Made by a program: the position numbers and the translations under genes. This document shows positions 12,384 to 15,098 of a stretch of DNA of 15,098 nt, piece by piece. How positions within the stretch are numbered: position 1 is the first letter of the stretch; each line of letters opens with the position of its first letter. The notes beneath the pieces are model-generated. The model had not been told where the DNA came from, did no database searches, and saw only the letters and a list, made by a program, of their open reading frames with translations. Source of the DNA: Selaginella moellendorffii (Eukaryota; Plantae; Lycopodiophyta); NCBI RefSeq assembly GCF_000143415.4, contig NW_003314533.1:1-15098 (forward strand), in the 5' to 3' direction.

Positions 12384-12607
12384 GGTTTAGGGTTTTAGGG
12401 TTTAGGGTTTAGGGTTAGGGTTTAGGGTTTAGGGTTTTAGGGTTTAGGGTTTAGGATTTAGGGTTTAGGGTTTAGGGTTTAGGGTTTAGGGTTTAGGGTT
12501 TAGGTTTAGGGTTTAGGGTTTTAGGGTTTAGGGTTTTAGGGTTTAGGGTTTAGGTTTAGGGTTTAGGGTTTAGGGTTTAGGGTTTAGGCGCGTTTAGGCG
12601 TTTAGGG
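12384..12607 (+). repeat. Arabidopsis-type telomeric repeat array (TTTAGGG)n, about 31 units, G-rich strand on +
   Basis: Direct reading. Variants TTTTAGGG, TTAGGG, TTTAGG, TTTAGGA, plus TTTAGGCGCG and TTTAGGCG at the right junction. Confidence 0.99.
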
Positions 12608-12767
12608 TCAAAGACACCCCGCGGTGTTGCAATCCGGCGAGATCGCGGCACCACTTTGCGCAATCCACATTCTCCATGTGCCGTTGTCGAAACGGCGTGA
12701 TCGAGAGCAAGTAGAGGAGGCAAGAGAATGAATTTTCATTCATTCGCGAGCGAGGGAGAAGACAAGA

Positions 12768-12820
12768 GACAACCCGAGACCGGTTTCGTCCTTTTTGGGA
12801 CTCATCAGCCGGGTGTAGTC
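12768..12820 (-). ncRNA. Minimal type I hammerhead ribozyme
   Basis: Minus strand: GACUAC-ACCCGG-CUGAUGA-GUCC-CAAAAA-GGAC-GAAA-CCG-GUC^-UCGGGU-U-GUC. Core boxes CUGAUGA (12808-12802) and GAAA (12787-12784) are intact. Stem II is GUCC/GGAC. Stem I is ACCCGG/UCGGGU extended by GAC/GUC. Stem III is reduced to the palindrome ACCGGU. Predicted GUC cleavage between 12778 and 12777. Confidence 0.93.
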
Positions 12821-13160
12821 GTCTAACGTCTACCCTAACCCTAGCTCGGCGCCGACTCTACTTATATTCTGGCTCTGTCACGTGGCGCGAGTCCGAGTGG
12901 CAGCCATGCGAAGTGCATGACGGCGTTGGCTCGCGAGGATGCGAACGTAGCACAGCTGGGGTTGGTGACTCCACAGCAGTGGTAGTCGCGGAGAATGACT
13001 TCGGCGGATCGCCGAAGATAGTAAGCGTTCGTCCGGCGGGTGACGTACCTTTGACGCAAGATAACTTGTAAACGTGGCATGATATGATGCATGCATTACG
13101 TCCACAATGCTTGTGTCACTTGTGCGTACCCGGCGACGAAAAACGTGGTTCACTTTGCAG

Positions 13161-13594
13161 GGAATATTCTCGGAATATTCGGTCGTTGACCGTTGACCCC
13201 GCGTTGACCGTGTGTGGACTGGGATGGTGGGGGGCCTGAGGCCACTCATACATACCCGGAGTCCAGCGGTTACATGGGGGAGAGCCATCCTGCGAGCTGT
13301 CGGCATGTGTCGCCGATGTCGAGGGAACGGCACCGTTTGAACGGAAAACATGCTTTTCCACGAGTCGTGTGTGGAGTTCAGAGTTGAAACTCACATATTC
13401 ACGATCGGAAGGAAGAGCAGAATCCAACGGTATATGCCGTTTTGACTCGGTCAACAGGGATACAGTCGGAATATTGGGGAATATTCCGTTCTGACCGTTG
13501 ACTCCGCGTTGACCGGGCGTTGACTCGGAAGGGGGGTGGCCTGGAGTGACTTGGGACATACCTGAAGTCCATCGGCCAGACCCTGGGAGTCATC
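13161..13594. repeat. Diverged ~130-bp direct repeat in the PLE 3' region (13161-13289 and 13468-13594)
   Basis: Both copies run GGAATATT..GGAATATTC..TGACCGTTGACYCCGCGTTGACCG..GACT.GGA.GG.GGG.GGCCTG..ACATACC.G.AGTCCA.CGG..GAG.CATC. Confidence 0.85.
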
Positions 13595-13658
13595 GAGTAC
13601 GCGGAGAAGGATGCAAACATAAGCTTCCGTGTCTTGCAAAGTGCGGTACAAGACGTGG

Positions 13659-15098
13659 CTAAGCTCGCGGAGGGAGCTTAGCCCTGACCAGAAACGAACC
13701 GAGGTTCGGGGAGCGTCTCCAGCACGTGATCACTCGAGGGAGTGTGTCTGTGGGAGCTTCATCCATCACCTGTTTAGGGTTTAGGATGTCCCCCAAGCCT
13801 AGCTGCGCACTGTGGAGTGTGTAGGGCAGCTTGAAGGCGAGGGGGGCCCGTCGACAGGCGTCGCTAGAGCGGCGCGAACGTGCAAGGAGAGCTTGATGTC
13901 GCTGGTCGTAGGAGATGCCGGAGAAGCAGTGGTGGAGGAAGGAGGTCGGGTATCCTCGGGCACGGAGGCGGTGGTAGAACCGCGTGCGCATGGCGTGGAA
14001 TCCATCGGCCGTGCTCTCGCGGAGGAGGTATCTCCGGAGCTCGCTGCGGATGAATGCCACTTTTTGGTGCCGTGGGTGAACCGACGTCCAGGGGAGGTAC
14101 TGGTAGGCGTTGAGCGGCTTCTGGAACGTGGACGAGTCGAGGCAGCCTGTCTCTTCAAAGCGAGGGCCTTTGAAGAAGTGGATATCGAGGATATCCAACT
14201 CTTCGAGCGAGATCACCGAGGTGATCTTGATCGAAGGACACAGCGTGCCGTATCCTCGGAGCCATCGTTCGAGGCCTGCTCGTGTACCTGTCCAAATGCC
14301 CACTCCGTCATCTATGTACCTTCGTAGATAGAAGGGCCAGTCGTTGGTGGCATGCTTGTACTCGGCTTCGAGAGAGCAGAGGAAGAGGCAAGCGTAGACC
14401 ACCGCGAAGTTGGAGCCCATTGCTGTGCCGCGGATCTGCTGGTAGATGTTACCGTCAAACTCCACGTAGTTGTGCTCCAGAACGAGGGCAGCCGCAGCCA
14501 TGAGGAACCGCGAGCGTGTGGTGTTGCCGTACTCGGCAAACACAAAGTCGCGGAGGCGTTGGAGACCTTCTCGTGTGGGGATGCTTGGGTAGAGGCTCTC
14601 TACGTCGAACGTGAAGAGCCAGCAGTCCCGCGGGAGCTGTAGGTGGAGGAGGTCCTGTAGCAGCGTGCGCGAGTCGGAAAGAAACGTTGGCTGCTTCAGC
14701 AGGATATCGTAGAGCTGGCGGTGAAGCCAACGCGCGAGGGGCTCCCACAACGTACCGATATAGCTTGCGATGGGTCGGCCCTTTATTGGCTGCTTGTGTA
14801 TTTTCGGAAGAAAATACATCATGCAAGCCTGCCGGGGTACGGCGGGCTGGTGCAGCAGGAACTGCTGTGTGGAGTTGTCGAGCCACGAGCAGCTGCGGTA
14901 CTTTGTGATGAGCTCGGCGAGGCGTTCCTGGAGGGATTTGGATGGCACGGAGGGGACCTTCACATAAACGAGTGGGTCGTTCAGTTGGCGGAGAGCCTCC
15001 TTCTGTACCAATCACGATCCAGCACCACCGCTCCAAGATTTTTGTCCGCAGGCTTGATGACGATGGATGTGTCCGTGCGAGAGAGTGGAGAGCACGCT
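13659..15098 (-). CDS. Penelope-like reverse transcriptase (partial at 5' end; 1-bp frameshift at ~15005)
   Basis: IVIKPADKNLGAVVLDRDWY (PLE DKG-type motif, different frame, ~15064-15005); YFLPKIHK..GRPIAS; FDVESLYPSIP; YQQIRGTAMGSNFAVVYACLF; RYIDD; LDILD; QKPLNAYQYLPWTSVHP; LRARGYP; RRSPNLGSFLVRAKL then stop. Confidence 0.95.

What the first reader, a model, noticed from the sequence alone, without database searches (positions are those of the whole stretch)
12384..15098. Telomere-primed, ribozyme-bearing Penelope-like retroelement attached to a plant chromosome end
Seen: the element is on the minus strand and its 3' end joins the 3' side of a G-rich (TTTAGGG)n tract, so its RNA would end ...UGA-CCCUAAA, complementary to the telomeric overhang. 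The RT stops right after the RRxxNLxxxLVRAKL motif, where endonuclease-containing PLEs continue into a Cys linker and GIY-YIG domain. I saw no GIY-YIG in the downstream ORFs. Established: endonuclease-deficient PLEs (Athena in bdelloid rotifers, Coprina in basidiomycetes, relatives reported from Selaginella) attach at telomeres with this polarity, and PLE RTs are the closest relatives of TERT. Inference: 12384-12607 was once the true chromosome end, extended by cDNA synthesis, and the present end lies to the right. The class is known. The full 3' RNA architecture here (hammerhead, hairpins, duplicated module, telomeric oligos) in a plant copy may not be described.
Basis: partly seen in the sequence, partly recalled or inferred. 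Interest (0 to 1): 0.85.

Follow-up and report, generated by a model that had tools for sequence, protein, structure and literature searches.

The report
Telomere-attached Penelope-like retroelement, already known

Summary
A degenerate (TTTAGGG)n tract at 12384-12583 runs into 25 nt of variant repeats. These join directly to the 3' end of a minus-strand Penelope-like element (PLE). The element has a structured ~130-nt tail, a hammerhead ribozyme (12826-12759), a duplicated ~110-nt module and an RT ORF (15011-13659). The ORF stops 13 residues after the SPNLGSFLVRAKL motif. No GIY-YIG domain was found downstream, nor upstream in a full-length relative.

Four more junctions in a public Selaginella moellendorffii scaffold have the same polarity and the same junction letters, so the variant repeats belong to the element. 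The tract itself starts exactly where a dispersed repeat is broken off, as expected of a healed chromosome end. Stranded RNA-seq reads cover the whole element from one strand, mostly from paralogous copies.

The interpretation (an endonuclease-deficient PLE primed on the telomeric overhang) is supported, but priming itself is inferred. The window ends inside the RT, so whether this copy sits at a present-day chromosome end is not shown.

The class is published for this very species: Gladyshev and Arkhipova 2007, Repbase Coprina Sm1/Sm2, and hammerheads in Cervera and de la Pena 2014. Other windows of this scan found the same element on other DNA. The copy is frameshifted.

Possibly under-described details: the element-encoded variant repeats, a loop-less palindromic helix III, and a tail shared between two RT families.

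The parts
11961..12383 (+). Dispersed repeat (LTR-like, begins TGTAAG), broken off exactly where the telomeric tract starts
   Evidence: 79% identical to L001 2127-2553, where the repeat continues beyond the matching point
12384..12582 (+). Degenerate telomeric tract of about 28 units, (TTTAGGG)n, with the G-rich strand on +
   Evidence: TRF score 350; unit census
12583..12607 (-). Element-encoded variant repeats CCCTAAA-CGCCTAAA-CGCGCCTAAA at the 3' terminus
   Evidence: Identical letters at four further junctions in L001
12608..12740 (-). Conserved, structured 3' tail of about 130 nt; it contains the 17-nt site 12628-12644, which is unoccupied here
   Evidence: 95.6% identical to the tail of the other RT family in L001; fold z -2.9
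12759..12826 (-). Type I hammerhead ribozyme; predicted cut between 12778 and 12777; helix III is the loop-less palindrome ACCGGU
   Evidence: Rfam HH9 E 5.8e-8; nearly identical copy at L001 4584-4653
12830..12844 (-). G-rich telomere-like oligo (CTAGGGTTAGGGTAG in the RNA sense), just 5' of the hammerhead
   Evidence: Conserved in L001 copy 1; function unknown
13161..13575 (-). 3' UTR with a ~110-nt module present twice (13161-13269 and 13468-13575), each carrying GGAATATTC-type palindromes
   Evidence: L001 copy 1 has three such modules
13659..15011 (-). RT ORF (450 aa plus stop) with an intact FDVESLY and YIDD catalytic core; it ends without an endonuclease domain
13772..13787 (-). Telomere-like 16-mer inside the ORF, coding the conserved ILNPKQ
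   Evidence: also present at L001 11616-11629 and 3317-3330
15005..15097 (-). Upstream RT segment with the DKN motif (IVIKPADKNLG), in another frame; there is a frameshift near 15003-15005; the window end cuts off the N-terminus
   Evidence: a paralogous DNA contig carries one extra G after 15003

Best explanation
This is a 5'-incomplete, frameshifted copy of an endonuclease-deficient Penelope-like retroelement. It belongs to the telomere-associated families published for Selaginella moellendorffii, which Repbase files as Coprina Sm1/Sm2.

Inferred history:
1. A chromosome broke or eroded inside a dispersed repeat.
2. Telomerase added TTTAGGG repeats to the broken end.
3. The element's RNA carries C-rich telomere-like repeats at its 3' end. 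It annealed to the G-rich overhang.
4. The element's TERT-related RT used the overhang's 3'-OH as primer and extended the G strand with cDNA. The element therefore lies on the minus strand, with its 3' end towards the centromere.
5. Later additions would lie to the right of the window.

Shown here: the anatomy, the polarity, the recurrence of the exact junction, the lack of an endonuclease domain, the ribozyme core, and transcription from one strand.

Inferred: the annealing and priming steps, and the role of the hammerhead. Its probable role is to process read-through transcripts that start in an upstream unit.
For: Tract and junction. RT identity and lack of EN.

The DKN and YIDD motifs are present.

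All five junctions (the window plus four in L001) have the same polarity and identical junction letters. L001 shows head-to-tail order with telomeric spacers, and one copy is only 33 nt long.

The left flank is a repeat cut off exactly at the start of the tract.

In the RT tree the window groups with P0001 (support 100). Both lie inside a clade holding all the named EN-less streptophyte sequences. The GIY-YIG-bearing sequences are in a separate clade.

The hammerhead is conserved in two copies.

All RNA-seq reads have the first mate on +, which points to minus-strand RNA.

Literature, not tested here: EN- PLEs attach to G-rich overhangs through reverse-complement telomeric repeats next to a hammerhead motif (PMC8557442). 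S. moellendorffii is a named example (PMC12477314; PMC13159263). Hammerheads are described in its PLEs (PMC4209133).
Against: The window stops inside the RT, so neither a distal telomere nor further copies could be seen.

No RNA read supports this copy's own junction with a long tract. Every RNA read across 12582 carries a paralog's letter and runs into non-telomeric sequence after about four repeats.

There is no pile of read ends at the predicted ribozyme cut.

The L001 arrays lie at least 16 kb inside a scaffold and are mixed with other repeats, so such arrays can end up internal.

In my tree the one recognisable Coprina sequence (Microbotryum) is not a close neighbour, and no Athena reference was available.
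Confidence: 0.85

Rival explanations
1. Internal capture. The element, together with its own 3' telomere-like repeats later expanded by slippage, was copied into a double-strand break inside a dispersed repeat. In that case the tract was never a chromosome end.
For: The element encodes at least three telomere-like repeats itself. The tract is degenerate, with 90% matches. The L001 arrays are not at a scaffold end.
Against: About 28 mostly canonical units is far more than the three variant repeats encoded by the element. In L001 a 33-nt copy lies between two tracts, which fits repeated terminal additions. No other half of the broken repeat was seen, although the window ends too early to look for it.
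Confidence: 0.08
2. This is an endonuclease-bearing PLE whose endonuclease lies in the unseen 5' part (Chlamys/Naiad order), or which lost it recently. On this reading the telomeric junction is incidental.
For: The N-terminal ~100 residues and everything upstream are missing from the window. Chlamys-type PLE-X families exist in Selaginella (PMC8557442).
Against: The full-length relative in L001 has no GIY-YIG in its RT ORF or in the 902-aa upstream ORF. The RT groups with EN-less streptophyte sequences, away from the GIY-YIG-bearing ones. The published PLE-X families target 28S rDNA, not telomeres.
Confidence: 0.04
3. Assembly artefact: a telomeric read was wrongly joined to a repeated element.
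For: The element is multi-copy, and the DNA contigs laid on it are short and come from paralogs.
Against: The same junction, letter for letter, occurs four times in an independent older assembly.
Confidence: 0.02

Closest known systems
Coprina-type EN-deficient PLEs of Selaginella moellendorffii (Repbase Sm1, Sm2; Gladyshev and Arkhipova 2007)
   Same: Same species, judging by 93-99% identity of shared modules to the public scaffold. Same EN-less RT and same 3' junction with telomeric repeats. The hammerhead is as reported in 2014.
   Different: Nothing essential differs; this is one decayed copy. I could not read the 2007 paper or Repbase. So I cannot say whether the variant terminal repeats, the 902-aa upstream ORF or the shared tail are described there.
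Athena elements and Terminons of bdelloid rotifers
   Same: They lack an endonuclease, attach to the G-rich overhang through C-rich 3' repeats, carry a hammerhead motif and form chains at chromosome ends.
   Different: Terminon units can exceed 40 kb, and there the ribozyme is described as immediately adjacent to the C-rich repeats. Here the unit is about 5.6-7.2 kb. The ribozyme lies about 150 nt upstream of the repeats and next to a G-rich oligo.
Fungal Coprina elements (e.g. Coprina-1_Alen, Microbotryum)
   Same: EN-less, telomere-flanked and transcribed. The RT ends at the same motif; identity to the Microbotryum protein is 32%.
   Different: Their hammerheads have a large helix III and are stable as monomers. 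Here helix III is a loop-less ACCGGU.
EN(-) PLEs of conifers and other streptophytes
   Same: These are the nearest RT relatives outside Selaginella: Cryptomeria and Ginkgo at about 46-51% identity, Closterium at about 39-43%, all without GIY-YIG.
   Different: Their chromosomal position was not examined here.
HeT-A/TART/TAHRE of Drosophila
   Same: They work alike: head-to-tail retroelement arrays added to chromosome ends.
   Different: They are non-LTR elements with an unrelated RT lineage, and they replace telomerase rather than coexist with it.

Membership tests
Penelope-like elements (RT) | DKN motif N-terminal to the RT core | tested here: met
   IVIKPADKNLG at 15005-15097 (-), in a shifted frame
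Penelope-like elements (RT) | RT core with catalytic aspartates, plus a thumb ending near an (R/K)xPNLxxxL motif | tested here: met
   FDVESLY, GTAMG, YIDD and SPNLGSFLVRAKL are present. 68% identity over 99% of the ORF to P0001, whose precomputed Pfam families are DUF8422, RVT_1 and HTH_animal.
EN-deficient PLEs (Athena/Coprina) | No GIY-YIG endonuclease C-terminal to the RT | tested here: met
   The stop codon comes 13 residues after the SPNLGSFLVRAKL motif. Pfam and tblastn with EN+ proteins find nothing downstream.
EN-deficient PLEs (Athena/Coprina) | No N-terminal GIY-YIG (excludes Chlamys/Naiad) | tested here: inconclusive
   The window lacks the 5' part. The full-length relative in L001, from the other RT family, has none in ORF1 or the RT ORF.
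EN-deficient PLEs (Athena/Coprina) | 3' end joined to telomeric repeats, so that the RNA 3' end is complementary to the G-rich overhang | tested here: met
   The window junction at 12607/12608, plus four junctions in L001, all with the same polarity
EN-deficient PLEs (Athena/Coprina) | 5'-truncated copies in head-to-tail chains separated by telomeric repeats | tested here: met
   Seen in L001: copy 1 is truncated within the RT, a 33-nt copy follows, and copy 2 is full length. Not visible in the window itself.
EN-deficient PLEs (Athena/Coprina) | Location at present-day chromosome termini | not testable with these tools
   The window ends at 15098 inside the RT. No public record of the neighbouring gene was found for extending the contig.
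Coprina clade | RT groups with labelled Coprina references | tested here: inconclusive
   Only Microbotryum was recognisable, and it falls in the other half of an unrooted tree. The literature files Sm1 and Sm2 under Coprina.
Coprina clade | Single ORF, the criterion quoted in PMC13159263 | tested here: not met
   The L001 full-length relative has a 902-aa ORF just upstream of the RT ORF and overlapping it. That paper reports the same exception in a fungus.
Hammerhead ribozyme, type I | Conserved core CUGAUGA...GAAA, a cleavage triplet GUC, and helices I and II | tested here: met
   E 5.8e-8. The score of 42 bits is under Rfam's gathering score of 52.
Hammerhead ribozyme, type I | Helix III closed by a loop (active as a monomer) | tested here: not met
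   The two helix III strands, ACC and GGU, are contiguous in both copies. This is the palindromic form that Cervera and de la Pena propose acts as a dimer.
Terminons | Giant multi-ORF units with an Athena RT | tested here: not met
   The unit in L001 is about 7.2 kb with two ORFs.

The most novel reading that the evidence does not exclude
The last ~130 nt plus the three variant repeats may form a portable telomere-docking cassette. It is shared at 95-99% identity by two PLE families whose RT genes are only 67% identical in DNA. The stretch from the hammerhead to this tail may also be a transcription unit of its own. On this reading transcription starts just 5' of the ribozyme, beside a telobox-like oligo, and reads through a short telomeric spacer into the next element. 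That would be the strategy HeT-A uses in flies, and it has not been described for plant PLEs.
Probability: 0.2. Interest if true: 0.55.

Novelty: already known. Interest (0 to 1): 0.22.

Why it matters
EN-deficient PLEs are the closest mobile relatives of telomerase, and they show how an RT can use a chromosome end as its primer. This locus is a clean textbook example in a land plant. It shows a healed break, a telomeric tract, and an element joined by 3' repeats that the element itself encodes.

It adds no new principle, because the family, its telomeric habit and its ribozyme are all published for this species.

Its practical value lies in annotation and in small details that could guide experiments: the exact templated 3' terminus, the dimer-type ribozyme, and the tail shared between RT families.

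Tried and rejected
- Pairing of the G-rich oligo (12830-12844) with the C-rich 3' repeats as a way of hiding the terminus: it does not appear in the minimum-energy or centroid folds. Dropped.
- Monomer versus dimer folding of the ribozyme: the dimer comes out at -51.7 against -48.6 kcal/mol for two monomers, which is not decisive. The dimer argument rests only on helix III having no loop.
- The 30-letter sequence that RNA reads run into after the repeats occurs in neither the window nor L001. Its origin is unknown; it may be the 5' end of this family.
- ORF1 of the full-length relative: no Pfam family above its cut-off, no Atlas hit, and no homologue of 0.55-1.75 times its length.
- Gladyshev and Arkhipova 2007 and Arkhipova et al. 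2017 are not held. Their content is cited only through other papers.
- The weak FMN riboswitch hit (E 0.08) and OppA thermometer hit (E 0.91) in the left part of the window score far below their gathering scores. I treated them as chance.

Full report
WHAT IS THERE

Reading the + strand from left to right, the window holds the following.

- 11961-12383: a dispersed repeat that begins TGTAAG. It is 79% identical to L001 2127-2553, a stretch of the public S. moellendorffii scaffold GL377752.1. There the repeat continues, but in the window it stops exactly where the telomeric tract starts.
- 12384-12582: about 28 telomeric units with the G-rich strand on +. The census is 20 TTTAGGG, 4 TTTTAGGG, 2 TTTAGG, 1 TTAGGG and 1 TTTAGGA.
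- 12583-12607: three variant units. On the minus strand they read CCCTAAA, CGCCTAAA, CGCGCCTAAA.
- From 12608 rightwards: the reverse complement of a retroelement. In order it carries a ~130-nt tail, a hammerhead ribozyme (12826-12759), a G-rich oligo (12844-12830), a 3' UTR with a ~110-nt module present twice, and the RT ORF (15011-13659). Further RT sequence in another frame runs up to the window's end.

THE PROTEIN

- The 450-aa ORF matches S. moellendorffii LOC112343723 (P0001, 580 aa) at E 5e-206 and 68% identity.
- The next hits are EN-less proteins of Cryptomeria and Ginkgo (about 46-51% identity) and Closterium (about 39-43%).
- The RT catalytic motifs are intact (FDVESLY, YIDD). The PLE-typical DKN motif lies upstream, but behind a frameshift near 15003-15005.
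- A paralogous DNA contig carries one extra G after 15003. This copy therefore looks decayed, unless the assembly dropped a base.
- The ORF stops 13 residues after SPNLGSFLVRAKL.
- Pfam finds no GIY-YIG in this ORF or in the four downstream minus-strand ORFs.
- Four GIY-YIG-bearing PLE proteins align only as far as the thumb. Their endonuclease parts match nothing in the window or in L001.
- The full-length relative in L001 has no GIY-YIG either, neither in its RT ORF nor in a 902-aa ORF just upstream.
- In a quick maximum-likelihood tree of 109 sequences the window RT pairs with P0001 (support 100). Both sit in a clade (support 92) that holds all ten named streptophyte sequences. The GIY-YIG-bearing sequences form a separate clade (support 99).
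- The tree had no labelled Athena sequence and only one recognisable Coprina (Microbotryum). I therefore take the clade assignment from the literature and did not test it.

IS THE JUNCTION REAL AND MEANINGFUL?

L001 holds two larger copies of the element. Read in the sense orientation, each is followed by (CCCTAAA)n.
- Copy 1 is cut off within the RT. It belongs to the window's family: 93% identity in the UTR and 85% at the RT end.
- Copy 2 is full length, with its 5' end near 6718. It belongs to the P0001 family.
- Between them, inside the telomeric spacer, lies a copy of only 33 nt plus the variant repeats.
- A fourth terminus closes copy 2.

All five junctions (four in L001 plus the window) share the letters ...TTTGA-CCCTAAA-CGCCTAAA-CGCGCCTAAA and the same polarity. 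Two things follow. The variant repeats are part of the element's RNA rather than telomerase product. And the join is not an assembly accident. If orientation were random, five of five junctions in the one predicted polarity would have a probability of about 0.03, quite apart from the identical breakpoint.

MECHANISM

The anatomy fits the published model for EN-deficient PLEs. C-rich repeats at the RNA 3' end anneal to the G-rich overhang, and the RT extends the chromosome's own 3'-OH (PMC8557442; PMC13159263). The broken repeat to the left suggests that the tract was first seeded by telomerase on an eroded or broken end. These steps are inferred; nothing here shows priming directly.

THE RIBOZYME

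- The core letters and the helix I and II features are all present. That includes the UAC bulge and the CAAAAAG loop, which match the Rfam HH9 consensus.
- The predicted cut falls between 12778 and 12777.
- Helix III consists of ACC directly followed by GGU, in both the window and L001. A hairpin cannot close without a loop. This is the palindromic form that Cervera and de la Pena propose acts as a dimer in animal PLEs.
- Their text calls the Selaginella ribozymes canonical. I could not see their figure, so I cannot tell whether this is a real difference.
- Copy 2 in L001 has no ribozyme hit at all. The motif is therefore not universal in these elements.

RNA EVIDENCE

Three raw RNA-seq runs of the same species label gave 94, 12 and 36 reads.
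- In every pair the first mate lies on +. In most stranded libraries this means minus-strand RNA, which is the element's sense strand.
- Most reads are 95-99% alike, so they come from paralogs.
- In one run the depth over 12560-12814 (tail plus ribozyme) is about 15 times the depth upstream. The drop near 12815-12830 has no loose ends.
- Every RNA read crossing 12582 carries a paralog's letter. After about four repeats it runs into non-telomeric sequence.
- These reads therefore show an uncleaved ribozyme-plus-tail RNA that continues through a short spacer into other DNA.
- This is compatible with transcription that starts just 5' of the ribozyme and reads into a neighbouring unit. The depth is low, however, and no pile of read ends was detected.

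TAIL SHARING

The window's tail (12740-12627) is 95.6% identical to the tail of copy 2, although the RT genes are only 67% identical in DNA. Copies 1 and 2 share their last 1840 nt at 99%. The tail folds better than shuffled controls, with z -2.9, and z -4.35 when the ribozyme region is included. The copies are too few and too similar to allow a covariation test.

COMPARISON WITH WHAT IS KNOWN

- Telomere-associated EN-deficient PLEs were reported for S. moellendorffii in 2007. This is cited in PMC12477314, PMC8557442 and PMC13159263.
- Repbase holds Coprina Sm1 and Sm2.
- Hammerheads in these elements were published in 2014.
- EN(-) PLEs are also listed for conifers.
- Earlier notes of this scan report the same element chains on other pieces of this genome.

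VERDICT

It is one decayed copy of a known family.

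Noticed in passing
window 12628-12644; L001 4787-6424 and 12235-13873: Both L001 copies carry a ~1640-nt segment, 99% identical between them, flanked by a 17-nt direct repeat (GATCTCGCCGGATTGCA) inside the PLE tail. 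The window copy has the site once and unoccupied, so it can serve as an empty-site control. A DNA contig of run X1 diverges at 12646 into a similar segment. Earlier scan notes read the segment as a site-specific LINE partner; a template switch onto a shared tail is the alternative.
   Followed up: partly
L001 6632-6690: An extreme 5'-truncated copy sits between two telomeric tracts. It consists of the last 33 nt of the tail plus the three variant repeats.
   Followed up: yes
L001 7191-9899: A 902-aa ORF lies directly upstream of the RT ORF and overlaps it in the full-length relative. It has no Pfam family above its cut-off, no Atlas hit and no homologue of similar length. Coprina elements are usually described as having a single ORF.
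   Followed up: partly
window 13161-13182 and 13457-13487; L001 11789-11812: Paired GGAATATTC-type palindromes (GAAnnTTC, reminiscent of heat-shock elements) recur in the repeated 3' UTR module of both RT families. Their function was not tested.
   Followed up: no
window 13772-13787; L001 11616-11629 and 3317-3330: The conserved residues LNPK near the RT C-terminus are encoded by CTAAACCCTAAA, which is a telomere repeat in the C-rich sense. This holds in both families, although their RT genes are only 67% identical in DNA. No copy primed from this internal site was seen.
   Followed up: partly
window 12560-12814 (reads from paralogs): In one RNA-seq run the depth over the ribozyme plus tail is about 15 times the depth over the rest of the element. 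These reads continue past about four repeats into a sequence found in neither the window nor L001.
   Followed up: partly
window 8432-10450 (-): An intron-less 672-codon ORF (645 aa from the first ATG) encodes a P-loop NTPase. It has weak AAA_30/AAA_22/AAA_35 hits, and its Atlas neighbours are AAA_35 and Crinkler-family clusters. Its G+C is 50-53% against about 39% around it. The exact protein is not on record.
   Followed up: partly
window 673-1463 (+): Integrase remnants (Integrase_H2C2, rve) of an LTR retrotransposon are split over two frames.
   Followed up: no
L001 14072-14200: By eye, the telomeric tract that closes copy 2 abuts an RT-like reading frame of another retrotransposon that is cut off at the join. 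This would be a second case of a tract seeded on broken repeat DNA. Not tested with a profile.
   Followed up: no
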